The position numbers and the translations under genes were made by a program. From contig CDMY01000613.1 of assembly GCA_001179505.1 (NCBI GenBank), positions 62,001 through 126,000 of the forward strand: a stretch of DNA of 64,000 nucleotides. The letters run 5' to 3'. The DNA is from Vitrella brassicaformis CCMP3155 (Eukaryota; Protista; Chromerida). The notes under the pieces are model-generated. The model had not been told where the DNA came from. It was given only the letters and a program-made list of their open reading frames with translations, and did not search any database. Of the stretch, positions 4,201 through 58,933 are shown piece after piece. Within the stretch, counting starts at the first letter, position 1. Every line of letters begins with the position of its first letter.

Positions 4201-7200
4201 GACGGCTGATTTGTGGGTGCTGTACCTGGTGTCGCCTCTGGCGTCGCCCCTCCGTGCGAATCAGATCCAGTGGGGGACATATGTCGACATGCTCGTGCAG
4301 TTCCAGGAGCCAACCGCCTCCATGATCCGCAAGATCGGCATACACATCGACTACGTCGACGGCGTCAGGCAAAAGGCGAGAAGAGGGAGAGGAGAGAGAG
4401 GGGGGCATGGCAGCCATGCGTCGCATCCTGATGGCCTGGTGTTGTGTGTGTATGTGTGTGTGTGTTTGGGGTACAGAAAGGTCAGCTGCCTCCGCATGAG
4501 CTGAATGGGACGGACTACAGGCGCCACGCACGATTCTACGCCACACTCATCCTATGGTGCGCGCGAACACAACACAACACAACACATAGGTGTATGTGTG
4601 TGCTCCCTCCCCATTCATTGACGGTGCGGTGCCTGTGTGAGCAGGTTCCTGCTTCGCGGTAGTCCCTTGAGCGATCTGGAGGAGGTCTTCTCGCTAAGCA
4701 AAGGCGAGATACAAAGCATACACTCACAGGCCATACTACTCGCCGGACGAGTATCNNNNNNNNNNNNNNNNNNNNNNNNNNNNNNNNNNNNNNNNNNNNN
4801 NNNNNNNNNNNNNNNNNNNNNNNNNNNNNNNNNNNNNNNNNNNNNNNNNNNNNNNNNNNNNNNNNNNNNNNNNNNNNNNNNNNNNNNNNNNNNNNNNNNN
4901 NNNNNNNNNNNNNNNNNNNNNNNNNNNNNNNNNNNNNNNNNNNNNNNNNNNNNNNNNNNNNNNNNNNNNNNNNNNNNNNNNNNNNNNNNNNNNNNNNNNN
5001 NNNNNNNNNNNNNNNNNNNNNNNNNNNNNNNNNNNNNNNNNNNNNNNNNNNNNNNACACACACACACATACACACCCACCAGCGCGTGTTGATCCCATCC
5101 CACTTTGTGCTCGCTAAGTGACACGTTGGGACTGCACTTCCTGGGTGCGTTGGTGCGCGAGATGGGCGACCGCATCTTCTACCTCAACAAGAAGGAGCTG
5201 GAGCCGCTGCTCCACATACCCGGCGTCACACAAACACAGGCCAGGTGAGTGCACGTGGCTGAGCAGTGATTGAGTGCAAGGATGCATTCATGGCCATACG
5301 TCCATCTCCCTCTCCGTCTGTGTGTCTGTCTCTGATGCAGAATCTTGTTCCAGTTGGGCTTCAAGGACCCCGTGTCACTGGCCAAGGCCAAGCCCGCCCT
5401 GCTGAGCCAGGCCATCCGCCAGACCTTCAAGAACAGGCAGCAGAAGGAGTTCGGCTTCCTGCGACACGGCCAGGGGCAAGAGGGGGACGATAGCGGCGAG
5501 ACGTTCGATTGGGTGCTGAAGGTGGCCAAGGAGCTGGTGGCGGCCGCACAGGCCATGACCATCGTCAAGGCCAACAAGGATGGACGAGAGGCGCACGAGT
5601 ACGTCAAGAAGCACCAGCAGCAGCAGCAGCAGCAGCGGCCGAGCACCAATGGGCGCGACCAGCACCAGAGCCAGCACCAGCAGCGGGAGCAGGGGCAGGG
5701 ACAGGGTGAGGGTGAGGCGGGTGGTGGTGACCCCATGGCGATCGACACAGACGAGGATGACCAACAGGTGGGTGGCCCCTCCCTCCCTCCCTCCCTCCCT
5801 TCCTACCACTACACATTCGCACGCGTCTCTCTTTCTGTGAATGTTCACTCAGCACGGCCTGGCGTTTCTTGAGGAGGGCACGGACGATGACGACGCGATG
5901 GTGCTCGTTGGCGGCACCGGCACCGACCCATCCCCCTCTGCCCCCTTATCTGGGGCGCCCCCGCCGCCCCACCGCCGACTCGTCGAGGCCCCTCCACAGC
6001 CCACGGCCTTCGCTGTCGACACCGACGATATGTCCGACTTGGCGGCACTCATTGACGACGTCGAGAAAGAGGGCGTCGACAAGGGCGTCCCGCCAGAGGT
6101 GCTCCTGTACGACTCCGCCGAGCAAGACCAGCAGCAGGAGGAGGATGACACGACGACAGGCGACGGCCAAGAGGGTGGTGGTGATGGTGCCGACGGACAG
6201 GGCGGCGTGGGGGTGCTGGTCAACACGACTGACCACCTGGGCGCCGCCGACCTTCAGGCCTTCCAGCGACACTTCGCAACGGCTCTCAGAGGACGGGCAG
6301 CAGCCAACCACCCCAGGAAGCGGGCATCATCGGCCCACAGCAATGCTGCGTCAGACGCCATGGCGATCGAGCCCGAAGCGTTCCATGCCAGGTGCACCCC
6401 CTCCCCGCCCCTCCGCCCTTCCCCACCGCCGCGCCGCGCAGCGACAGTTGCTGTTGCTGCTGCTCCTCGGAAGCGACAGAGAATGGACCAGCATGAGGAG
6501 GAGGGAAATGGAGATTGGCAAGAGGGTGGAGACGTACCGAGCAGCGCCGTGTCTGATGAGATGATGGAGCTTGATCTGGATGTGGGCCACCGGCCGAAGA
6601 CTGAGGGGGCGGCGATGGGGATGAGGGGCAGGCAGGGGCACGGGGTGGAGGAGGAGCTCTCGATTACCTTCACGGTGCCGAGAGGAAGCAGAGAGGCTGT
6701 CTGGGCCGCTCTCAGACGGGTGAGGGGAACAAGAGCACACCCACACCATGCAGCAGGCAGAGGACCCGCATTCATTCCCTTGTTCTGTGTGCGCCATGCG
6801 ATGGATGCAGCTGGGCCGCCTCAACATGACTGACGAGGACGAGTGGGCCGTGCACGAGCACCAGAAGGCCCTGACGGCCCCAGCAAGCCTCACACGCCAA
6901 GATTCTCCCCTCCTCTCACCCACAGAAGCCAACCACCACCACAACCAGCAGCACCAGCAGCAGCAGCAGCCGCCCGACATCGGTGCCGACTCCCCCATGC
7001 AGACGTCCCCCGCCATGCCGCGAGCAAGAGAAGAGAGTGGCCACGGCAGCACACAGAACGGCAGCAGCGGTTTGTTCGACTGGCTCATGCCCCCGCCAAG
7101 ACGAGGGCATGATGACGTGGATATGGCCGAGGAGGTGGTGCCGTCGCTCAGAGGCCTGCAAGACCTGTGTGGTGGCGAGGTGATCGAGGGCGATGACCGG

Positions 7201-46081: not shown

Positions 46082-46622
46082 TGTGAGCGGCTGACTGGCT
46101 GAGTGATCAGGCTAGCTAGAGCAGGCAGAGAGTGAGAGATGTCGCTTTGACACGCGTTTTTCGTCGTCGACGATTTATGCATACATACAAGTGCGTTGGC
46201 GCCGTGCCCTGTCTACTCTACATATCAGTTGTGTTTCCTCCTCATCAGTACATTCTCCGGTTTCATAGCAGCCAATCCATGCACTTGCATGCACTTGTGT
46301 TGGCTGCCATGATGCTGGGCGCGATGAGCGTGAAGAAGACACGCAACGAGGTGGCGCGGCAGGGTGTACTGCCACATGGGTGGTGTACATGCATCCTGCT
46401 CCTATGGACGCTGGCATTCTCCGTGAGGCTTTTCCACATATTCCTTCACTGGCCAGCGTCGTACACGTCAATGACATTACACACGAGCACACAAGCGGTC
46501 ACACGGATCATCCATAAGTCAGTCTTCCTGCCCCCCACTGCATGGCGACGCCATCCTACGCTCGCAGCCCCGCCCACCCACTCCCCCACCCACAGCTCCG
46601 CGCTCCATATTCCCCTCTTCAC

Positions 46623-47929
46623 TGTCGTCGATGTCGGGGCCCTCGCAATCTCTCGGCCTCGGTGTGGGCGGCAATGTGGGGTCGACCTCCAGGGGCGAGC
46701 CGAAATAGACCGTCAGGAAGTCGGTGAAGCTCGGAAGCGGGGTGGGGGGATACTTTTGATAAACCTGAGAAGACAGGTAACAACAATGCAGGTGTGTCTC
46801 TGTGTGGTGTCATGTGTGTGGTCTCTGTGTGTGGTGTCATGTGTCGCTGTCACTGACCCAGTCAGACACCCTGATGATGGGGACGGCAAGCCTGAGCAGT
46901 GAGTGCAGCCGGAGGCGAGGGATGACATGACATGCATGAATCCATCCACTGTGTGTAGCATCCATACCAGATGAGAAACAGCGGCAGAATGAAGAAAAAG
47001 AGGCATCCTGCGATGATCAACGATACCCGATACGCTATCGGCAGCTGAATTATGGATGGAATGAATGAATGAATGAATGGATGAATGAATGAATGATGAG
47101 CCGTATTACATTTTGCCTCTTCTCACCACTGGCTTGCTCTTGAATTCCCCCTTGAGCACCAAGAAGATGTCCTCAACTCCCTGCACTGTCGCCGCGTCAT
47201 AGTCACCCTTTCGCAACGCTGCGAAACACACACACACGTCTGTCTGTGTATCTGCCTGTCGGAGTCTTGGCTTCTCTCGTCATTCTTAATTACCTGGCCT
47301 CATTCGTTGTATGACATCGGCTAGGTGTTGGTTCTTTAGCGTTTCCTGCGCCCCCGTGCCCGTCTTGACGTACACCACAGAGTCGTCCTTGCTGATGAGC
47401 ATCAGGATGCCGTTGTTGCACCGACCGTTGCCTATCGCCCAGTGGTTGCCCAGCTGTACCACGCCATGAGGACATCCATCAATCTCTGTCTTGTTGCTGT
47501 GCGAGTGTGTCTGCGTACTTTTTCAGCGAATCTCTCGGTGCCTGTGCCGTATCCGCCGAGTGTGTGTATCTGTTTGCGGCTCATCTGCTGCATGAGCGCC
47601 ACGCCCATCTCGAAGGGCCTCTTCCCCGGACCACACAACACAGACGTTTCCGACGTGATCCGACGCAGCGTGTCTGACACCTGCTCGGCCGCCTTCCTCG
47701 ACAGTATGCCATCAGGGTCGCAGATCTGCATCATTAATTGCCACACACACAGATCACATCACATTGCAGACGGAGATCTCTGCGATGAACGACAGCCTCT
47801 CTGGCTCACCCATCCGCTGGTCTTCTGTCCGCACGCGAAGGGCTGGGTAATTGGATCCGGATACTCTTCATACCGCCATGCCTTGCCATCAGCAGCGCAC
47901 GCACACAGCAGCGACACAACCAGGCGCAT
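46623..47929 (-). CDS. TPM-domain (TLP18.3/Psb32/MOLO-1-like) single-pass membrane protein; 3' end not resolved
   Basis: Signal-like MRLVVSLLCACAADG, then YPDPITQPFACG|ICDPDGILS..LGNHWAIGNGRCNNGILMLISKDD..TGTG..LRKGDYD, then TM segment SLIIAGCLFFFILPLFLIWY and a Pro-rich tail. Confidence 0.75.
47056..47096. repeat. (GAAT)n tetranucleotide tract in a TPM-gene intron
   Basis: ggaatgaatgaatgaatgaatggatgaatgaatgaatga. Confidence 0.85.
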
Positions 47930-47993: not shown

Positions 47994-50900
47994 ATGGAGG
48001 CAAAGAGGGAGCAGCGCGGCTGCAGTGAAGGTGAAAGTTCTCTCTCACCAGTCAGCCCAAGCAGGAGCACCTCGTCGGATGAGATCTTGGAGGACGGCGG
48101 CGGAACACACACTCACAGTGCAGAGGAAGTGAAGCAACAGGATAAAGACGACCATGGAGAGACGACACGACAGCCGCTGGTGAGTTTGGGCCCGAAGGAC
48201 GGTGAATGAGGGAGGAGCCTAGGTTGCTAATGTGTTTGTGTGTGTCTGGCCATGCAGGTGCCGCAGTCACAGTGTTTCAGGTGCAAGTGTGCGCTTGACG
48301 CCTCGTCCAAGAAGCACAGATGCCGCCTCTGCCAAGAGGTCTTCTACTGCTCGCTCCGTAAGTCACTTTGGCATGCGCACAGAGCACACAACCAGATTCG
48401 TGCAGCTGTGAATGGTTGTCTGTCTGTCTGCCTGTCTGTCTGTCTGTCTGTCTGTTGACGCATAGGTTGTGCCGCCGACGACTGGAAGATCCACAAGGAG
48501 CAGTGCGAGTGCTTCAGGGAGCTGCTCGTCAAGGCGTATCCCCGCACCGTGGCGCTTCTCTACATCGGCTGGATTGACTGCGCCACGTTCGTCGAGCTGC
48601 AGAGGCAACGGGAGATCCAGGAGGTCAGACGCGCCATCGACCAACATCACAAGATGGCAGCAACACCAGCGGCAGCCAGTGGCGACGGTGACGATGACCA
48701 GCAGCAGCAGCAGCTGGGTGTGGTTCTGACTGCGCACGTACACGCACCACTGGACACTGACACGCCCCTCTACGCCCTCATGCTCGACGCCACCTTCTTC
48801 ACCCTTCCTCGCCGCACCGTGCGACTGATCCGCTTTCTGCCCTTCGCTCGTGACAGCTGGGATCTGTACGACGACAAGGCGTCCTACCACAAGTTCACCT
48901 GGCGGTTCCTCAAGACGGCGGTCGAGGACTACAGTGCAGCCCTCGGCCTCCGCATTCGGTGCTTGGTGGTCGGCCCCGCCATCCCCTTGTATGACAACTG
49001 TGCCGTCACGCTGCTTGGCGGCACGGTGCGCGCCGTGCCGGCACCGGAAAGACTGTTCGCCGCCGCGTGGCATCGCGTCATGGAGGAGGTCTTCATGCAT
49101 TCGGCGCCGACGTGTCGGTCCGAGTATGTATCGCCGTCCGGTCCTGACGCGAAGGTGAACATGGAGAATGGCGGCCCCCTGAAACGCCTGAAGAGGGCCG
49201 TGAAGCATGGGGAAGTGGATGCCCTCACCGAAGCTGACGAGGCATATTTCTTGTCGGAGCTCGAAGCCCTTGACGCCTCCACTGACCTTGGTACATGTCA
49301 GTCAGTCAGGGAAGGGAACCATACTATGGTGGAAAAGTGTGTGACCTTTCTTCGTCAGGTGCCCAGGGTCGGCGGCCATCGTCGTCGAACGAGGACTTCA
49401 TCTATCCGCGGCTGATATCCCCTCTATGGGAGCATTTCGACGACGGCGTGCCGACGGTGACGTCGCCGTGGGTGCATCACATCGTCCACCGGTGGGCGGA
49501 GACCATGATTGGTCACTGTCAATCGAGCTGGACAAGAAGGTCGACAGGGACATATCGCGCCTGAAGGTGAGTGGCCCCCCTCCCACAGACACACACAGGC
49601 ACAGCAGGAGGCACGTGACACTCATTCGTGTGTATGGTGTCCCTGCTGCCCCCCCACAGGCGGCGGGCAAGACGATGATGGACAAGAGGGCCGTGACGGA
49701 GAGCACGCTCCAGAATGTCATCAAGCGGGTCGAGAAGGAGTTCATCAACGAGGTGCAGACACTGGCTGCGCTGCCGGTGATCCCCATCGATAGATTCCTA
49801 CATCTCGAGGACCGCACAGACGACACATCAGAGGAGAAGGCGGGCCCGACACCGGCAAAGTGGGAGGACACGCAGCCGGCGGAGCACCATAAGAGGGTGG
49901 AGTTCGTGTCATTCCAGGAGGCCGTCAGCGAGCTTAAAAAGTTCGAGCGCAGCCTCAAGAGGGCGCACGATGGCAAGGTGGGCGGGTGTGTGTGTGTGGT
50001 GTGTGGATTCATGCATTGATGGGATGGGTGTGTGCGTGCATGTTCTGTGTGCAGAGCACTGCGTGTCAGGGATCCCTGTCGACGGGCCTCTCGAAGATGT
50101 TTGACTACTTGGACAAGTATTGCCATTTCTCGATGTGGCCCGCTCTACTCAAGGTCTCATGCACGAACACTGAATACGCCGTGCGTCCATCGTGCACACA
50201 TACATACATGTCTGTGTCTATGTGTGTGTCCTTTCTGTGTGTGTGTGGTGCAGAAGGAGACCGAGTTGTACAAGCTGATCACTCTGCGGCTCAAGCCCGG
50301 CAACAAGACACTCGTGCCGACGTGCAATGTCCTCCTGGGGAGGCTGAAAGACGCTGAGAAGGTCATCGAGACGCCACACACGCCCCTGCAGGTGTGGGCC
50401 GAGCCAAGAGGGGTGGACAGACAGACAGACAGACAGACAGACAGATAGGCGGCACGCACGAGTCTTCTTTCTCTTGTTGGTGTCAGAACAAGACAGATCG
50501 GGTGTAACTCGACATCAGCATCTCTGGCCAGCATGCAGGGCGTCTCGTCTTCAAGCTGCATTGGGACGTCACGCCGCTCACCTGCCTTAACTTCGCCTCT
50601 TTATGCAATGGCGACCACAAGGTAGGTATGTGAGTTGGCCGCCCCACCCGCTCCCACAAACGAATCCATCACTTCTGTGCTGTCTGTGTTTTGTGCTTTG
50701 CTTGTTCTGGGCTTGGCTTTGCCTTGGCTGGCGCAGGATGCTGGCAGCAAGGGGTGCCCGCTGCACTACTTGAATACGCAGATCAGTGGTGTGACGGCTG
50801 GCCAGGCCATCTACGGAGGCTATCTCGACTCGAAGGCAGGCGTCCGACGGCCCAAGGTCAGCGAGCCCGCCTTCTACTTGGAGCGGGAGAACTGCCTGAT

Positions 50901-51280
50901 GCCGCCGAACAACCCCGGCACCCTCGCCATGATCGGCATGTGGGACAACAAGAAGGAAAAGTACATCTATGGTGAGACACACACATACACACGTGTTACA
51001 TCCGTGCATCTATGTCGCTTCCATCCGTCTGTTTGTGTCTGCAGGTAGCCGCTTTGTCATCACAGCCGTGGCCCACTTCGACATGTGCGCCGGCTGCTGC
51101 ATCATTGGCGAGGTCAACGCCTCCGGCCTGGCCCTCATCGACCGCATCAGCCGCCTGGGCGGGCAGCAGGCCAGCAGCAGCAGCAGCAGCAGACAGGGCG
51201 ATGCCTCTGACACCAACCAGCAGGCTGTCTTGCCACGGGAGCCCGTCGTCATAGCGGGCGCCGCCTCGATGAGCGGTTGA
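47994..51280 (+). CDS. MYND zinc finger + helical region + cyclophilin-like domain; in-frame TAA at 50505-50507 separates the cyclophilin (truncated allele, pseudogenised tail, readthrough or base error)
   Basis: MYND: CFRC..CRLCQEVFYCSL(R)CAADDWKIHKEQC. After intron 50392-50486: NKTDRV*LDISISGQHAGRLVFKLHWDVTPLTCLNFASLCNGDHK|DAGSKGCPLHY..PGTLAM..|GSRFVIT..CIIGEV..; stop 51280. Confidence 0.8.
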
Positions 51281-51800
51281 TTGGGTTAGCAGGCGACCGA
51301 CCTGTGTTGTGGCTCAGATGATTTATGTGGCAGTGTCTTTACATATCTAGTATGGTGTCTGTCTATGTATCTATCTATCTATTTGTCTGGCGGACGAGGA
51401 GTGAGTGGTGTCTTGTATGAGAAATGAATGGTGCACAGGGGGTGTGGGGTGTGGTACCTCTACGACGATGACTGGCTGTGACGTGACGGGCTTTATGGAT
51501 GGCCACATGAATGAATGCATGGAACACAAGTCTGAACGGTCTGACACATGTAGGCGTCTGTGCTTTCATTGCACGTCTCTGCCATTGCCATTGCCAAGCA
51601 GCCGCGAACACCACATAAATGAACGATGTACGTCGATAGATAAAGGGCCCGGCGCAAGTGCACATTTGCGCCATCAAGCCAAACGGGCAACACATGCCAC
51701 TCGAACACACATGAATTCAACGCGGTGTGATCGAGGCGATTCGCCTCCCTCCGTTCCTTGCCACTCGTCCGTCAGTCAGCCAGCAAACCCAACCAGCCCG

Positions 51801-54647
51801 TCAGTTGGGCAGCTCGCCGCAGTCCTGGATGAGCACTGGCTCGGCGAGAGCGGCCATATCCTCACAGTCTGTCATGTCACTGAGGGTTGGCCGCACGTCG
51901 CGGTTGCGCTTGGGGGTGCTGGGGGTGCTGTTGCTGGCCGTGAGGGAGATGGCGTGCAGAAAGCTGAGGGCCGGGAGGTCGTCGATGACACCCACGACCG
52001 TGTCCCACATGGTGCACCGGTTGTTCGACGAAAGTGTTATCGTGAAGCGGCTGCCTGCAATGCACTCACGCCACGCACACATAAATAACGAGCATACAGA
52101 GAGAGTGTGAGATGTCAGCTGCGCCCAGGGCAATGCCATCCTACCATGCACTTTGTGTTTCTGGTTGCCCTTCTTGTCGGTCGCCACTTCCCCAAGACTG
52201 GCCACCATGCCAGGCCGCCGGGGTGCGATGAGGGACGTGTGGTGGTCCCATCTCGTGTGGTGCATGCCATAGATGCTCTCGGTGCAGACACTGTACCTGC
52301 GGTCGAGAAAGCCCCCAAACAGCTCGGACCCTTCATAGGCATACGGAATGACCGTGCCTGAACAAAAGCCATCCATCCATCCATCCATTCCTGCTTGTGT
52401 GTCTACGGCGCCTCTTACTGACTGACTGACTAACTGACCGACCCACCTTTGTAGTGCAGCGGGTATCCTGAGGTGCCCTTGCCCTTCTCGCCCGTGCAGA
52501 AGCACCTGACACACGAACGATCGCAGCCAGCAATGCAATCGTTGTTGCATTCGATTCATCCTTGTTGCCACATGTATGTATGCATCCACCTGAAGTTCTC
52601 GGCCGCCTTGGGGTTGACGTCGGTGAAGAGGGTGATGACCACACGCCGCACCGGGGCTGACGCACGACCACTCTGGAGATCAAGGAACACCTTCGGGCGC
52701 TGAAAACAACACATGCGCTCTGCAGACACACGTGTGTCGGGCTGTGCGTATGGTGTTCTCTTGCCTTTGGTGGTGTCGGGCTGTTGTCGACCGTTTCGGC
52801 GCACAGGAAGCCCTCCGTCATGTGCTCGTGGAAGGTGGCGCACTCTGCCTTCACCTGATAGAAAGATAGATAGATAGATATGACGGAACAAACAAAATAC
52901 ACATTCTGGGAGGTCGCTCTTTCTGGTGGTCTGTTTCCGCCTTACCTGTTTGTCTGGGCTCTGTTTGACTTTGAAGCAAATGGTCCTCCAGAGGTCTGTG
53001 GTCTCCTGACATCACACACAGACACAGGGAGAGATGAAAGGCCACTTGTGTGTGTGCACCGGACCTTGAGCAGCTTGGCCCAGTGAGTGTAGTCGACCTG
53101 CAGGGTCAAATACGAGTCGAGCTGGTGCAGCAGGTCCAGCAGATCGTCAGTGGCCTGGAGTGACACCACAGACATCACACCGTGCGAGTGCATCCATCCC
53201 TGTCCCCAAGCGCACATGGATGGCGAGCGCGCTCTTGATGGATCTCTCGAAGTCCCTCAGCCGCTTGACAGTCTCGGTGAGGTCGTTGGCCTGCCGCCTC
53301 TCTTCAGCCAGCCGATCGAGCACCGCCTCCTCCTTCTCCCTGGCAGTCTCTGGATCGTCGACGGACGGCAGCCGCGCATCAGCTGACGGGGCAGAGGCCA
53401 ACAGATGCCCTTGTTGTGTGCATGTGTGTGTGTATGGTGTAGGCACCCGGTGGACGGCCGGTGAGGGTGTTGAGGAGCTGGTCGATGGGCTTGGGCTCGG
53501 CCGTCCTGAAGCTGTCGACGATCCGAATGAACTCAGCCACGGCGTCCCTCTCCAGTCGGCCCAGCTGCTGCTTCACCAGCACACCCTTGTCGATGGCCTT
53601 GCCCTTGGTCTGCACAACACATGTGACCCATCAGCACTGCCCTTGCCGTGCTCCTCTACTTGATGCATGGCTGACCTTGAGTTTGGCCATGTCCTGGTCG
53701 GCCTTCGCGTCAAGAGCCGTCGCGAGGACTGATGGTTTGCCTCTCAGAGCCTGCCGCACCCACTCACCAACCCACCTCTCGTCCACCGAGGGCACCAGCT
53801 GGCCGCCCGTCGCGTGACGCACAAACCGGGGCCACCGCATGGGAAGCAGTCGCGCATCGACGGGAGTCGACCAGTCCAGAAGGTGGTCTCGCACGGCTAG
53901 CGGCATCCCGCTGAATGTCTTGGTCACAACGGTTGCGAGGGCGTAGACGAGGGTAATCACGGCCGGTGGAATGACGAAGACGCCTTCATCCATCAAGTAG
54001 ATTTGCGGGCTTGTCGCTCCCAAGGCCCAATGCACGACAAAGCGCACAGTGGAGATGCCCTCCCGCTGCAGGTCGCGGATGGCGGCACTGGCGAAGGACA
54101 AGAGGCCGCGCGTCACATCCTCGGTGGACGGGGGGGACGACATAGCCAAGGGCAGGAACCGAAGGGCCGGACACTCCGAAGCGCCAGATTCACCACCAAA
54201 CGTCGCATCGACCACACAGACATCAGCGCCAAAACCGCAGAATAAAGAGGCCGTGTGTGTGTCAAGATGCAGATCCACTTCGCCTGGCTGAGGTCCACCG
54301 ACCTCGCCAGTCGTAGCCACAGCAGATGGTGCCTCTTTGGTGGCCGCCATGCCAGCGAGGCACTTCTCGATGGCTGCCTTCTCGCGCTCCAGCTGACATG
54401 TGTGGAAGTCGGCCATGTCGAGGAAGCCGCTGAAGAGCCGCGCGACGTTCGTGTTTGCAAAAGCCGGCCTCACAATGGCGCGGAAGAGCTCACAGGGCTC
54501 CTTGTGACTCTCTTCATCCTCGCACAGACACTGCGTCGTGCAGTAAAGGATCTCGCCGCAGACTTGGCATGCGACTCGCCGGCCGACAGAGCCGCACTTG
54601 AGGCACTTGAGAGCAGCGTGGGGATGAGTCATTGACGCGTCTGACAT
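51801..54647 (-). CDS. MYND zinc finger + helical region + degenerate cyclophilin domain (paralogue of the preceding gene)
   Basis: MYND: CLKC..CQVCGEILYCTTQC..HKEPC. Cyclophilin: RPKVFLDL..RRVVITLFTDVNPKAAENFR|CFCTGEKGKGTSGYPLHYK|G..ESIYG..RPGMVAS..GSRFTIT..VVGVI..VLIQDCGEL-stop. Confidence 0.85.
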
Positions 54648-54884
54648 CGGTGGGACGGCGGCGTCACGACAGATGAAGAGATGTGGTGCTCATAGAGGGT
54701 AAAAAGGCGTGGATCTGCAACGAGTGTAGACTCCTCAAGCTCAGGTCTGATTGCTGCAGCAGCGCCGGACCGCCCCAATTGCGAGCTTAGGAGGAGGAAA
54801 GGAAGGAGAGAAGAAGGGAGAAGGGTTCTGGAGGAAAGGGGGAAAGGGTTATTGCTTGTCTGCTCCCGTCGATCTTCAACACAG

Positions 54885-56664
54885 ATGTCGAAACCCATCG
54901 ATTATTCCAAGTGGGACAATCTCGATGACAGCAGCGATGAAGATGACGGCCCGCCTCCCTCGTCCGCCTCCAGGCCCGCCGCACCCTCAGCGCAGGCTGT
55001 TGCCGCCCGCCTCGCCTCTATGGCCATCGGCCGTGGACCGATGCAGCCCGCGCCACCCAGCAGCACGTCAAGCGCCGTGGACGACCGCCTCCCCTTCAGC
55101 TCCAGTGAGATGCCCGGCTACAAGGTGCGAATGGACGCCTCGACGCCTGACCCTGAACTGGAGCTTCAGCAGTGCATCGTGTGCGGCAAGCGACCTGAGC
55201 TCGGCCAGCGATTGAAGGTGTGTGACCGTTGCGTCCGGGAAGTCAGCCCCCTCTACTGCAGCGAGGATTGCCTGAAGCAGCATTTCCAGCAGGGGCAGCA
55301 CACGAGGGAGATGTGTCGGATGGGCAGAGCGATGTACGTTGAGCAGGGCTCGCTGCGCGGCAATCGGCATGCCGTCAGGTAAAGAAATGAGAGGAAACAT
55401 GGCGAGTGGCAATCATTGTGATGTCTTCCTACATAGGTACCTTCTGGGCTGGATGACTGAGGACGCATTTTTCAAGCACCAGCGTCAGAAGCAGCAGGAG
55501 ATACAAGACGAGATAGCGGCCTACGGTCGCCCCTCGCATCTGAAGATGAGCGTGAGCGTGTTCAACACCGTCGACTTCGCTTTCGGTGTTGTAGAGTTGG
55601 CGAGCAGCTTGGCGGAAGGCCATGCACTTCTCCGCCATCCCCCTGCTGACACCGGTGGAGTCTTTTACCCCGATTGCGTTATCTATCCCAGCTATCAAGT
55701 CTTCCCTATCGCTTGGCGTGAGGTGAAGGAGCCCACGGGTCCCGTTCTGGAGGTCATGCTGGCCGAAAGGATCGTCATCGTCATGTCGAACATCATCATC
55801 GCACTGCTGGCGCTGACGGCGCGCTGCCTAGGGGTGATCGGCAAGCAGTACGTCGAGGGCGACGTTAATGCCCTGTTCTGGCGCAAAATGACCTGCCCTC
55901 TGCCCATGGGCGACCGCACTGCGCACTTTTACTTCATCCCTGCACCATGCGGCGTCGTTACAGATGCCCTGACGTACGCCGCGAAAGAGGTCTTCAGCGA
56001 TGAAGAGGGGCGGGAGATAGATGCGCTGGTCAGCGGGTCCGCTTTGGTGCGGACAGGTGTAATGACGCTGCAGCAGCGGGTGATGCGGGACGAATGGCGA
56101 AGGGAGATCGAGTGGGAGATCGGCGCCATGGACGGCATGAGCGACGCCATTGACGGCATGTGTCAAGAGTACGCTGCACAGGTAGGTAGAGAGGGGACAC
56201 ACACACACTTCATTGGCGCATGGTCTGTTGTGCGTGAATGCAGCGAGGCATCCAGCCACGAGCGCTCAAAGCCGCCTTCATCGACAAGGCCGTTGCATTC
56301 ACGGACGTCTTCAGGCAAGTAATTACTGTACACTCAATGCACACGACACAAATGAATGGATGGATGGACGGACGGAGTGTTCTGTTGTGTGTCTGAGAGC
56401 AGGCGGCACCTGATTGAGTATGCCGACGGCATGGGAGAGATAGTCGGGAAGTCCTTTGCACAGCTGACCGAGCTGACCGACGACGAGATGCGGCAAATCA
56501 AGGCTGAGGTGGCGGCTGCCGAGTACCCCGCCGACATCCAGGAGCTGATCGCAGCCGAGAGTCCGGCATATGCAGAGGACGTGGACGGGCCGATAGTCAC
56601 TCTGGCTGATGGGAGGCGGACCTGTGAGATGGACCTGCTACTGAGGACTCAGGGGCTGCTATGA
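54885..56664 (+). CDS. MYND zinc-finger protein with N-terminal IDYSKWD acidic motif
   Basis: MSKPIDYSKWDNLDDSSDED; CIVC..CDRC..LYCSEDCLKQH..HTREMC; downstream exons 55437-56181 and about 56402-56664. Confidence 0.8.
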
Positions 56665-57244: not shown

Positions 57245-58933
57245 TCAGTCAATGCCCAGCGACACAAACAGGCCAGTCTGCCTGTCGATGTGCCCCAGCT
57301 GTTGCCATGCGAATTGGCAGTCCTGGTCGCCCAGATGCTCGTTGAAGCCCTTGACCACACCCACCACACCATGGCTGGCCGCCTCGTCCAGCCGCGCCTT
57401 GTGCACCACCTCACGCAGCCCCAGACGGCCGGCCGTGTGCACCACATGAGGCGGACGGCTGTCGGCCCCATCAGAGACGGCGAAGCACTGCAGCGGCACG
57501 CGCACCATCACGCCGCCCAGACTGCCCGTCACGCCCACCACCTCCCTGTTGCTGCTCGCATGCAGCGCCGACTTGACGAAGTGGGTGACAGCCGCACGCA
57601 CACGCCGAAAGAGGCGGCTGTTGCGTAGGGGGATGCTCTCGTCGATGGCCGCCATGGCCGCGTCGATGTCGAAGAGGTATGATGCGATGCGCCAGGCGAA
57701 GACTGGCGCCTCCTGCGGGCCGACGGCCAGCCGGGGGGTCAGCAGGGCCGCGAGTGAGCGCTGGGGGGCGAGGGCGGTGTTGATGGCCGACATGACGGCC
57801 TCGGACAGCTCATTCAGCACTGTCGCATACTCGGCCAGCACCCTCCGTTGACAACGACGGTGCTGCACCTCGGTTGCGGTGGGCATGCGGGCGATGGATG
57901 GGACCGCCCCGCCCCGCAGCAGCACACGGATGACGGTCCTCTGCTCGTCGATCCGGTCTGCCTCCCGTCGCTGGACGACCTCGTCGAGCGTCCTGGCAGC
58001 CTCTGCTAGGGGTGTCAGGTTGGCCCGGTTCGGCCTCCCTCTGTTGACGTCGTCGGCTGTCAGCTGGCGGCACAGCCAATGAGCCACACAGGGAGAGCCG
58101 TATCCGGCCGCCTCGTGCAGTGGCGTGCGGCCGAAGTTATCTGTTGCCGTCATGTTGACCCTGCGGCTGGTGATGAGGGTGAGGTACTCGTCCATGAAGA
58201 GCTGGGAGAAGGCAGTGTGTGTGGCAAAGTGCCTGGATGCCTCATGCACCAGATTCTCTCCGCCAACGGACCGCTCGGCTGCGAGGGTGCTGTCGTGTTG
58301 GATGAGGCGACGGAAGACCGACATGAGGGCCGCCTCGTACTGGCAACTGACGGGGCGGGCAGCGTAAGGGATGTAGGGAGGCCTCATTACCCTGACTCCT
58401 CGCACGTTGGCCTGGCGCGACAGGAGGGCCTCCACAGCCGTCAGATTGCCCGCACGAATCGCCATCTTGATGGGCCTATCCGTCGACCCCTCCGTCAGAT
58501 TGGGGTCCGCATTGACGTCCGCCCCTCCGTCGACGAGTGCATTGATGATGTCACGCTGTAGCTGACGGGAGGACCACTGCGGCAGGACGACGGGCACCTC
58601 CTTTGGGTAATCATCGCCGCGCGCATAGAGGGATGGGATGTTTGTTGGGCTGTCGATGGCGAAAGACAGGCAGCTGTATCGACGGCCAGCGGTGCCTGCG
58701 GTGCCACGGACGCGCAGGCCGCCGGTGGCTCTCGGGTCGGCTCCTTGCTGGATCAGCGACGTGACATAGGAGGCCTCAGTGAAGCTGCGCCGAATGCAGC
58801 CCTCCAACAGCTGCCCACTGACAGTCGTGACTCCCTCATCGGGCAGGAAATCGACGTCGTCCAGCCCCTTGCAGCCGGGCGACGGGGCGGCAGCATGAGG
58901 TGCTTGCGACGAGGCAGACGACGGCTGGGCCAT
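57245..58933 (-). CDS. Ankyrin-repeat protein, single exon, lineage-expanded type
   Basis: Uninterrupted ORF of about 562 aa; ankyrin motifs ALVDGGADVN, PIKMAIRAGNLTAVEALL, GRTPLHEAAGYGS, TPLAEAA. Confidence 0.88.
   Translation of the reverse strand: MAQPSSASSQAPHAAAPSPGCKGLDDVDFLPDEGVTTVSGQLLEGCIRRSFTEASYVTSLIQQGADPRATGGLRVRGTAGTAGRRYSCLSFAIDSPTNIPSLYARGDDYPKEVPVVLPQWSSRQLQRDIINALVDGGADVNADPNLTEGSTDRPIKMAIRAGNLTAVEALLSRQANVRGVRVMRPPYIPYAARPVSCQYEAALMSVFRRLIQHDSTLAAERSVGGENLVHEASRHFATHTAFSQLFMDEYLTLITSRRVNMTATDNFGRTPLHEAAGYGSPCVAHWLCRQLTADDVNRGRPNRANLTPLAEAARTLDEVVQRREADRIDEQRTVIRVLLRGGAVPSIARMPTATEVQHRRCQRRVLAEYATVLNELSEAVMSAINTALAPQRSLAALLTPRLAVGPQEAPVFAWRIASYLFDIDAAMAAIDESIPLRNSRLFRRVRAAVTHFVKSALHASSNREVVGVTGSLGGVMVRVPLQCFAVSDGADSRPPHVVHTAGRLGLREVVHKARLDEAASHGVVGVVKGFNEHLGDQDCQFAWQQLGHIDRQTGLFVSLGID

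What the first reader, a model, noticed from the sequence alone, without database searches (positions are those of the whole stretch)
47994..54647. Tail-to-tail paralogue pair with a MYND + helical domain + pseudo-cyclophilin architecture
Both genes start with a complete MYND finger and end in a cyclophilin fold of the Cyp40 type (LCxGxK..G.PLHY). In both, the catalytic FHRII..FMxQGG segment (Arg55/Phe60/Gln63 of CypA) is replaced (ISGVTAGQAIYGG; IPYAYEGSELFGG), so PPIase activity is probably lost in two different ways. I do not know this domain fusion from model organisms. ZMYND10 works with an immunophilin (FKBP8) and HSP90 in dynein assembly (established). A single-chain MYND-immunophilin could be a fused version of such a chaperone relay (inference).
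Basis: partly seen in the sequence, partly recalled or inferred. Interest (0 to 1): 0.75.

Follow-up and report, generated by a model that had tools for sequence, protein, structure and literature searches.

The report
MYND finger fused to dead cyclophilin
In the alga Vitrella brassicaformis, one of these two facing genes is an intact, expressed fusion of a MYND zinc finger to a cyclophilin domain that has lost its catalytic residues, and the other is a recently broken copy; both belong to a fast-evolving gene family found only in this species, whose role is unknown.

Summary

**Gene B** (54647 to 51801, minus strand, 10 exons, 725 aa, P0008) is intact and spliced in RNA-derived contigs. It encodes:
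- an N-terminal MYND finger;
- a ~270-aa alpha/beta domain, not a "helical domain", with an RNase H-like core;
- a ~190-aa helical region;
- a divergent-loop cyclophilin domain. Pfam scores it 25.8 bits against a 21.7 cut-off. Arg55, Phe60, Met61, Gln63 and Phe113 are replaced, and Asn102, Trp121 and His126 have no counterpart in the aligned consensus.

**Gene A** (47994-51280, plus strand) is transcribed and spliced as one RNA, but it is broken. It has a frameshift at 49511-49515 and a Tyr-to-TAA change at 50505-50507. MYND and cyclophilin are therefore not in one reading frame, and the public annotation splits the gene in two. Its intact paralogue, P0003/P0014, shows what was lost.

A and B are only about 25-30% identical and belong to different subfamilies.

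**Family.** I count at least 9 MYND/cyclophilin-like genes and at least 5 shorter partner genes. An exhaustive profile search found them only in Vitrella. Gene B sits head to head with one partner, gene C (54885-56664), and this module, with its promoter, is duplicated elsewhere in the genome.

**Reading.** The proteins are most likely non-enzymatic scaffolds. Nothing here supports the HSP90/dynein relay idea. The scan had already found this family on other DNA of the same genome (s1-239454, s1-197279).

The parts
51801..54647 (-). Gene B, intact, 725 aa (P0008). Exons: 54647-53676, 53609-53447, 53382-53216, 53154-53065, 53005-52946, 52854-52765 (GC donor), 52699-52590, 52505-52447, 52357-52145, 52054-51801 (TGA).
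   Evidence: Exon phases and translation are identical to the public protein P0008. GT-AG/GC-AG joints appear in RNA-derived contigs X1 and X7 for six of nine introns. Annotated as a 725-aa gene.
54492..54605 (-). MYND finger of B (residues 15-52). All 8 Zn ligands are present; the ligand-contact Gln/Trp positions are Leu/Glu.
   Evidence: Pfam zf-MYND 16.6 bits, below the 22.7 cut-off; paralogue P0002 scores 22.8. Ligand pattern read from the sequence. Contact residues per PMC6916684.
53676..54473 (-). Middle domain of B (residues 59-324): helices, then a beta-beta-beta-alpha-beta-alpha core of RNase H-like topology.
52765..53609 (-). Helical region of B (residues 325-515, exons 2-6).
   Evidence: Full-length AF2 model: helices 305-507, pLDDT mostly 70-90. 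No significant Pfam hit.
51804..52699 (-). Cyclophilin-like domain of B (residues 516-725, exons 7-10). The pseudo-active-site segment is encoded at about 52305-52355.
   Evidence: Pfam Pro_isomerase 25.8 bits vs cut-off 21.7. phmmer to PDB cyclophilins E 6e-19. Family profile E 4e-25 over 165 of 214 positions. The AF2 model of this part has pLDDT below 50, so the fold is not confirmed by modelling.
47994..51280 (+). Gene A, transcribed and spliced but with a disrupted frame. Exons: 47994-48179, 48258-48357, 48466-49290, 49359-49566, 49660-49977, 50055-50153, 50254-50391, 50487-50621, 50737-50971, 51045-51280.
   Evidence: Joints in RNA-derived contigs; X7 record 22 (3046 nt) runs from 48466 to 51834. 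Phase walk. The annotation splits it into 634-aa and 165-aa genes.
48273..48506 (+). MYND finger of A, split by the intron 48358-48465. It has 8 Zn ligands and keeps the conserved Trp.
   Evidence: Sequence read. The paralogue P0003 finger scores 26.2 bits vs cut-off 22.7.
49511..49515 (+). Frameshift in exon 4 of A. The ORF from the ATG then ends at TGA 49562-49564, giving 438 aa.
   Evidence: tblastn of the intact paralogue changes frame between 49510 and 49516. GC3 switches frame near the exon's 3' end. DNA and RNA contigs agree with the window, with 0 gaps.
50505..50507 (+). In-frame TAA in exon 8 of A, at the position of Tyr in the intact paralogue (..RVYLDIS..).
   Evidence: The splice acceptor at 50487 is confirmed by RNA contigs. 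The site is identical in DNA contigs X2 and X5 and in RNA contig X1.
50508..51277 (+). Cyclophilin-like remnant of A (exon parts 50508-50621, 50737-50971, 51045-51277). It is out of reach of the upstream ORF.
   Evidence: Pfam Pro_isomerase 26.1 bits for 50508-50630 alone. 42-61% identity to P0014's cyclophilin domain; dN/dS 0.40.
54885..56664 (+). Gene C, head-to-head partner of B, 523 aa (P0001): Cdc37-like N-terminal motif, MYND finger, the same middle domain, a short tail, and no cyclophilin domain.
   Evidence: It is the best hit of the middle-domain profile.
54648..54884 (.). Shared 237-bp region between the start codons of B and C, a likely bidirectional promoter.
   Evidence: It aligns with the matching region between P0010 and the C-like gene in L002 at 72% column identity, with perfectly conserved blocks.

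Best explanation
The interval holds two convergent nuclear genes of Vitrella brassicaformis. Both belong to a species-restricted, rapidly evolving multigene family.

Gene B is a working member. It makes a 725-aa protein with four parts:
1. a MYND zinc finger;
2. an alpha/beta domain with an RNase H-like core that lacks a conserved acidic triad;
3. a helical region;
4. a divergent-loop cyclophilin domain whose catalytic and proline-pocket residues are replaced.

It therefore cannot be a prolyl isomerase. Most likely it acts as a non-catalytic scaffold or adaptor (inferred).

Gene B is transcribed divergently from a conserved short promoter shared with a shorter paralogue, gene C. Gene C has the MYND and middle domains but no cyclophilin domain. 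The two probably act together, perhaps as a heteromer through the shared middle domain (inferred).

Gene A belongs to a second subfamily. Until recently it had the same architecture. It now carries a frameshift and a nonsense codon. It is either a transcribed pseudogene or makes only a 438-aa MYND + middle-domain product.
For: Gene structures and frames. Gene B equals P0008.

Domains: Pfam cyclophilin above threshold. PDB cyclophilins at E 6e-19 and 4e-25, with residue-by-residue loss of Arg55, Phe60, Met61, Gln63, Gln111 and Phe113. These changes are shared across eight family members. Fold of the N-terminal 330 residues.

Gene A lesions: located against the intact paralogue P0003/P0014 and by codon composition. 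They are present in DNA and RNA contigs of three studies. dN/dS is 0.50, 0.44 and 0.40 before, between and after the lesions, so the damage is recent.

Family distribution: a profile search of 1.84 billion representatives found six Vitrella clusters plus one false hit. There are seven B-type proteins.

Module: the head-to-head B-type/C-type pair recurs in L002 with a homologous promoter.

Selection: paralogue dN/dS in the dead cyclophilin domain is 0.48-0.63, below 1.
Against: - No function was tested. The scaffold role and the B-C partnership are inferences from architecture and gene arrangement.
- The AF2 model of the cyclophilin part had pLDDT below 50, so retention of the fold rests on sequence profiles alone.
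- dN/dS of 0.5-0.8 over the whole gene shows only weak constraint.
- Contigs drop rare variants. A minor isoform of gene A that uses the GT at 49301 (as the annotated 634-aa model seems to; my inference from its length) or an intact allele cannot be excluded.
Confidence: 0.6

Rival explanations
1. One reading: a single-chain MYND-immunophilin that works as a fused HSP90 co-chaperone relay, like ZMYND10 with FKBP8, for example in dynein assembly.
For: MYND fingers can dock on HSP90 co-chaperones; the PHD2 finger binds the PXLE motif of p23 (PMC6916684). Partner gene C starts with a Cdc37-like motif that is conserved in a second copy. C-type proteins carry a PxLE just before their own finger. 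The cyclophilin profile also hits the inactive axonemal PPIL6 (E 2e-14; Foldseek prob 0.82).
Against: No TPR or other HSP90-binding domain was found. The Cdc37 match is 17 residues long and below threshold. The B-type finger lacks the ligand-contact Gln and Trp. The family is absent outside Vitrella, unlike the conserved dynein-assembly factors. PPIL6 is one of over a hundred cyclophilin hits, not a specific relative.
Confidence: 0.1
2. The family descends from a hAT-like DDE transposase (zinc finger + RNase H-like core + helical insertion). That transposase lost catalysis and gained a dead cyclophilin. Its multi-copy, clustered, inverted arrangement would be a relic of that origin.
Confidence: 0.15
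3. Gene A is fully functional: the frameshift and TAA are sequencing errors, are bypassed by an alternative splice form, or are read through.
For: All later exons stay open in the homologous frame with strong coding GC3. dN/dS is not raised after the lesions. A GT at 49301 would keep the frame open through exon 4 (my reading of the sequence). TAA ends none of the other 35 annotated genes sampled.
Against: The lesions are identical in DNA contigs (X2, X5) and RNA contigs (X7, X1) from three studies, with no gaps or mismatches. The RNA contig uses the donor at 49291, not 49301. Frame 0 of exon 4 has non-coding GC3 of 0.3-0.55. Even the alternative donor leaves the TAA, where the annotation ends the gene. 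Two independent lesions in one gene fit decay.
Confidence: 0.07

Closest known systems
Divergent-loop cyclophilins, including Cyp40 (PDB 1ihg) and single-domain plant or parasite cyclophilins (5yb9, 4jjm, 2hqj)
   Same: Same domain family. The profile matches at E 4e-25 to 4e-21. They share the loop insertion ending in ..G.PLHYKG and the N-terminal ..NPKAAENFR..CTGEKG block.
   Different: Catalytic residues are replaced: Arg55 to Tyr, Phe60 to Ser, Met61 to Glu, Gln63 to Phe, Gln111 to Arg, Phe113 to Thr; Asn102, Trp121 and His126 are not kept. There is a 9-residue insertion before the HGSRF strand. There is no TPR domain. About 515 unrelated residues lie upstream.
Non-catalytic cyclophilin-fold subunits, e.g. 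PPIL6 of axonemal doublets (9fqr, 8j07), PnsL5 of chloroplast NDH (7eu3), mL83 of kinetoplastid mitoribosomes (6hiv)
   Same: A cyclophilin fold used as a structural or binding part. They appear among the hits.
   Different: No specific kinship. Those proteins are conserved over wide lineages and have other partner domains, whereas this family is confined to one species.
MYND-finger proteins (ZMYND10, SMYD, PHD2/EGLN1, ETO, BS69)
   Same: C4-C2HC finger with the usual spacing. In PHD2 the finger is also N-terminal.
   Different: The B-type finger lacks the ligand-contact Gln and Trp. None of these known proteins carries a cyclophilin domain. No SET, prolyl hydroxylase or other known partner domain is present.
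hAT transposases and their domesticated ZBED relatives (Hermes, 4d1q/8sjd)
   Same: The order is zinc finger, helices, RNase H-like sheet, long helical region. They are the best structural neighbours in two libraries.
   Different: Similarity is weak. There is no DDE triad, BED finger, hAT dimerisation domain or inverted repeats, and the genes are intron-rich.

Membership tests
Cyclophilin-type PPIase domain (Pfam PF00160) | Sequence match to the family model above the curated threshold | tested here: met
   P0008 scores 25.8 bits vs 21.7. Eight of eight MYND/cyclophilin-type members scanned match, best E 5.5e-9. PDB profile hit E 4e-25.
Cyclophilin-type PPIase domain (Pfam PF00160) | Catalytic and proline-pocket residues (CypA Arg55, Phe60, Met61, Gln63, Asn102, Phe113, Trp121, His126) | tested here: not met
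   Alignments to solved cyclophilins and the family alignment give Tyr, Ser, Glu and Phe at positions 55, 60, 61 and 63, and Arg and Thr at 111 and 113. The remaining residues have no counterpart in the aligned consensus.
Cyclophilin-type PPIase domain (Pfam PF00160) | Eight-stranded beta-barrel fold | tested here: inconclusive
   The full-length AF2 model has pLDDT below 50 over 506-725. The strand and helix order fits, and Foldseek still finds cyclophilins (prob 0.82-0.87).
MYND zinc finger (Pfam PF01753) | Eight zinc ligands, C4-C2HC, with family spacing | tested here: met
   Read directly in A, B and C.
MYND zinc finger (Pfam PF01753) | Score above Pfam's threshold (22.7 bits) | tested here: inconclusive
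   B scores 16.6 and C 17.1, both below. Paralogues P0002 (22.8) and P0003 (26.2) are above.
MYND zinc finger (Pfam PF01753) | Ligand-contact Gln and Trp of the PXL-binding groove | tested here: not met
   The B type has Leu and Glu. The A type keeps Trp but has Ala for Gln. The C type has Phe at the Trp position (residues per PMC6916684).
Cyp40-type immunophilin (HSP90 co-chaperone) | C-terminal TPR domain that binds HSP90 | tested here: not met
   No TPR family appears in Pfam scans, even at E 10. The protein ends with the cyclophilin domain.
hAT / DDE transposase | Conserved Asp-Asp-Glu triad on an RNase H-like core | tested here: not met
   The only invariant acidic residue in 13 sequences is D313, in a late helix. 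The Asp in strand 1 is limited to the B type.
hAT / DDE transposase | Sequence match to hAT, BED or dimerisation families; terminal inverted repeats | tested here: not met
   No such Pfam hit. Only microsatellite-based inverted repeats were found.
Cdc37 (for partner gene C) | Cdc37 N-terminal, middle and C-terminal domains | tested here: not met
   Only positions 1-17 of CDC37_N match, at E 0.13-0.2 and 13 bits vs 26.1.

The most novel reading that the evidence does not exclude
The family may be a domesticated, catalytically dead hAT-like transposase lineage that captured a MYND finger and a dead cyclophilin. It would then have diversified in Vitrella as two-gene modules driven by a bidirectional promoter, whose products pair through the transposase-derived domain. 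That would be a new kind of lineage-specific adaptor built from three disabled or repurposed domains.
Probability: 0.12. Interest if true: 0.65.

Novelty: new variant of a known kind. Interest (0 to 1): 0.4.

Why it matters
Pseudo-enzymes built on the cyclophilin fold are known as fixed parts of large machines. This case differs: a whole gene family joins such a dead domain to a MYND finger and an unnamed RNase H-like domain. The family is confined to one free-living relative of the apicomplexan parasites and is still gaining and losing copies. It offers a compact system for asking what a cyclophilin fold does once catalysis is gone, and how lineage-specific gene modules arise.

It also corrects the public annotation at four points:
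- Gene A is one broken gene, not two genes.
- The 634-aa model appears to rely on a splice donor that the RNA contig does not use; this is my inference from the model's length.
- The model of P0006 lacks its first exon.
- One C-like gene model (381 aa, L005) seems to start too late, because the match to gene C begins upstream of it.

The practical weight is modest, because no function is known and the family is absent from parasites and model organisms.

Tried and rejected
- **Pfam and PDB searches on single exons.** They gave almost nothing for the central cyclophilin exons. The domain became clear only with the database protein ids.
- **Word-based protein search with B's first exon.** It found nothing because of the length filter.
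- **P0007, the seventh hit of the profile search.** It is a bacterial fibronectin-repeat autotransporter whose score sums ten weak repeats. Rejected as a relative.
- **Metagenome scan with the cyclophilin profile.** It returned only other cyclophilins at 37-41% identity. They had no MYND finger, though my catalytic-motif pattern did not match them either.
- **Full-length AF2 model.** It failed on the cyclophilin part, so I do not claim the fold from modelling.
- **Literature searches.** Searches for MYND with cyclophilin or Vitrella, and for the DYSKWD motif, found nothing relevant.
- **Stop-codon reassignment as an explanation for the TAA.** Considered and set aside. The same gene also has a frameshift, and the sample of 36 stops is too small to judge.
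- **Active transposon.** Rejected: no inverted repeats, no catalytic triad, and an intron-rich gene structure.
- **Hand-joined spliced protein of gene A.** Exon references and the intact paralogue were used instead.


Full report
**Origin**

The window is nuclear DNA of Vitrella brassicaformis CCMP3155. By my offset from the called-gene coordinates, it covers positions 62001-126000 of contig CDMY01000613.1. I confirmed it: the proteins encoded here are exact database entries from that organism, and the fetched contig carries the same genes.

**Gene structures**

Six-frame translation and reading of the DNA gave exon models. I checked them against public runs. Runs X7 and X1 behave as cDNA assemblies: their contigs skip GT..AG intervals that the DNA runs X2 and X5 retain.

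- Gene B (minus strand) has 10 exons. All are in phase and sum to 725 codons. One intron has a GC donor.
- The gene B translation is identical to the public protein P0008 and to the 725-aa gene call.
- Six of gene B's nine introns appear as joints in the RNA contigs. The other three lie next to microsatellites, where the tool drops rows.

**Gene A is broken**

Gene A is represented by a single 3046-nt RNA contig that runs from exon 3 (48466) to 51834, with a further joint at 48179/48258. The MYND half and the cyclophilin half are therefore on one transcript. The reading frame, however, is not continuous.

1. Exon 3 ends in phase 1. Exon 4 is then read in a frame that stops at TGA 49562-64, which gives a 438-aa product.
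2. The downstream exons need the other frame.
3. The intact paralogue P0003/P0014 aligns to exon 4 in one frame up to 49510 and in another frame from 49516.
4. Third-position GC switches frame at the same place.
5. Exon 8, whose acceptor at 50487 is confirmed by RNA, reads ..DRV-TAA-LDISISG.., where the paralogue has ..DRVYLDISVDG...

Both lesions are present, without mismatch or gap, in DNA and RNA contigs from three studies.

The annotation ends a 634-aa model at that TAA and calls the rest a separate 165-aa gene. To judge by its length, the 634-aa model uses a GT at 49301 that the RNA contig does not use. That reading puts exon 4 in a frame with non-coding composition.

Between gene A and P0014, dN/dS is 0.50 before the lesions, 0.44 between them and 0.40 after them, at dS of about 0.8-1.1. 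Gene A was therefore an ordinary constrained member until recently.

**Domains of gene B**

- *MYND finger.* The eight-ligand pattern is complete. Its Pfam score is below threshold in B (16.6) and above it in paralogues (22.8 and 26.2). In solved MYND-peptide complexes a Gln and a Trp contact the ligand (PMC6916684). The B type has Leu and Glu at those positions.
- *Cyclophilin domain, match.* It passes Pfam's threshold. It matches solved cyclophilins at E 6e-19 as a single sequence and at E 4e-25 as a family profile, over 165 of 214 positions. The best matches are divergent-loop cyclophilins, and Cyp40 is among them.
- *Cyclophilin domain, catalytic residues.* The alignments give these replacements:

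| CypA residue | Gene B |
|---|---|
| Arg55 | Tyr |
| Phe60 | Ser |
| Met61 | Glu |
| Gln63 | Phe |
| Gln111 | Arg |
| Phe113 | Thr |

  Asn102, Trp121 and His126 have no counterpart in the aligned consensus. The same kind of replacement is seen in all eight members aligned.
- *Cyclophilin domain, model.* The full-length AF2 model did not fold this part with confidence (pLDDT below 50). The fold is therefore inferred from sequence only.

**The unnamed middle part**

An AF2 model of residues 1-330 (13-sequence alignment, pLDDT 67.5, pTM 0.59) shows the finger, three helices, and then a three-strand/helix/strand/helix core.

- Foldseek against the PDB ranks Hermes hAT transposase first (E 1.6e-3, prob 0.95, TM 0.28). 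Below it come integrases, P-element transposase, NurA, Argonaute PIWI and RNase T.
- The ESM Atlas gives hAT-like/ZBED RNase-like and Mutator transposases at TM 0.35-0.40.

All of these share the RNase H-like motif, so that topology is the safe statement. Kinship to hAT is only a lead. No acidic triad is conserved, no hAT Pfam hit appears, and no inverted repeats flank the genes. Residues 305-507 are helical, with pLDDT mostly 70-90.

**Family and distribution**

I searched a profile of the middle domains of A, B and C against 1.84 billion representative proteins. It found seven proteins. Six are from Vitrella, and the seventh is a false hit on a bacterial repeat protein.

- A word search with the close paralogue P0002 listed seven B-type proteins of 594-741 aa, all from Vitrella. 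UniProt names them automatically after one domain or the other.
- With gene A and P0014, this makes at least nine MYND/cyclophilin-type genes.
- There are at least five shorter C-type genes: P0001, P0004, P0005, P0006 and one in L005.

A and B are 25-30% identical and so belong to different subfamilies.

**Gene arrangement**

- Gene B and gene C are head to head, with 237 bp between their start codons.
- In L002 a C-type gene lies head to head with the B-type P0010, 175 bp apart. Its true first exon, with the same DYSKWD..SDEDD motif and a MYND finger, is missing from the public model.
- The two intergenic regions align at 72% column identity, with perfectly conserved blocks.
- Elsewhere on this contig, two B-type genes that lack the finger face each other, next to another C-type gene.

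**Selection**

Between B-type paralogues dN/dS is 0.5-0.8 overall and 0.48-0.63 in the dead cyclophilin domain. The family is under weak constraint and turns over fast. It includes a pseudogene (A), finger-less copies (P0009 and P0013) and a copy with a lost zinc ligand (P0011).

**Interpretation**

- *Shown:* the architecture, its expression, the loss of catalytic residues, the breakage of gene A, the restriction of the family to one species, and the duplicated divergent module.
- *Inferred:* that B acts as a non-enzymatic adaptor, and that B and C work together.

For gene A, which has no stored full-length reference, I used exon references and the intact paralogue instead.

Noticed in passing
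window 54885-56664 (+): Gene C (P0001, 523 aa) is a third paralogue with the MYND and middle domains but no cyclophilin. Its N-terminus, ..PIDYSKWDNLDDSSDEDD.., resembles the first 17 residues of Cdc37 (Pfam E 0.13-0.2) and is conserved in the L002 copy. C-type proteins also carry a PxLE motif just before their own finger.
   Followed up: partly
L002:14698-15159 (-): The public model of P0006 (383 aa) seems to lack its first exon. Gene C residues 2-161, including the Cdc37-like motif and the MYND finger, match upstream of the annotated start at 62% identity.
   Followed up: partly
L005:7067-12582 and L005:4980-6604: On the same contig, about 40 kb beyond the window, two B-type genes (P0009, P0013) face each other 373 bp apart, and both lack the MYND finger. 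The match to gene C starts at 4980, upstream of the annotated 381-aa model (5103-6552), so that C-type model may be cut short.
   Followed up: partly
window 53233-53709; P0008 vs P0009/P0013: Contigs with 4-12 mismatches and higher depth map here, so they probably come from close paralogues. The helical region of B is 93-94% identical to P0009/P0013 (dS 0.10-0.15), while the cyclophilin domain has dS 0.29-0.73. This mosaic suggests gene conversion.
   Followed up: partly
window 52700-52764 (-): Intron 6 of gene B has a GC-AG boundary. RNA contigs of two runs support it.
   Followed up: yes
window 51281-51834: The RNA contig of gene A runs to 51834, past the stop codon of the convergent gene B (51801-51803). 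The two 3' ends may overlap. The assembly is unstranded, so this is not proven.
   Followed up: no
L001-L005, 36 annotated genes: Stop codon use is TGA 28, TAG 7, TAA 1. The single TAA is the premature one in gene A. The sample is too small to say anything about TAA in this genome.
   Followed up: partly
window 48408-48462, 50407-50454, 52369-52390, 52855-52880: Introns of these genes carry tetranucleotide microsatellites (CTGT/GACA, GGAT/ATCC, GATA). These break short-read contigs and hid three splice joints.
   Followed up: no
L013:402-629: A marine metagenome contig encodes another cyclophilin-like protein with a degenerate active-site stretch (..YEWFSGYYVNGGD..). It is unrelated to this family.
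   Followed up: no
window 46519-47929 (-) and 57245-58933 (-): The flanking genes are ordinary: a MOLO1/TPM-phosphatase-domain protein (311 aa) and an ankyrin-repeat protein (562 aa).
   Followed up: no
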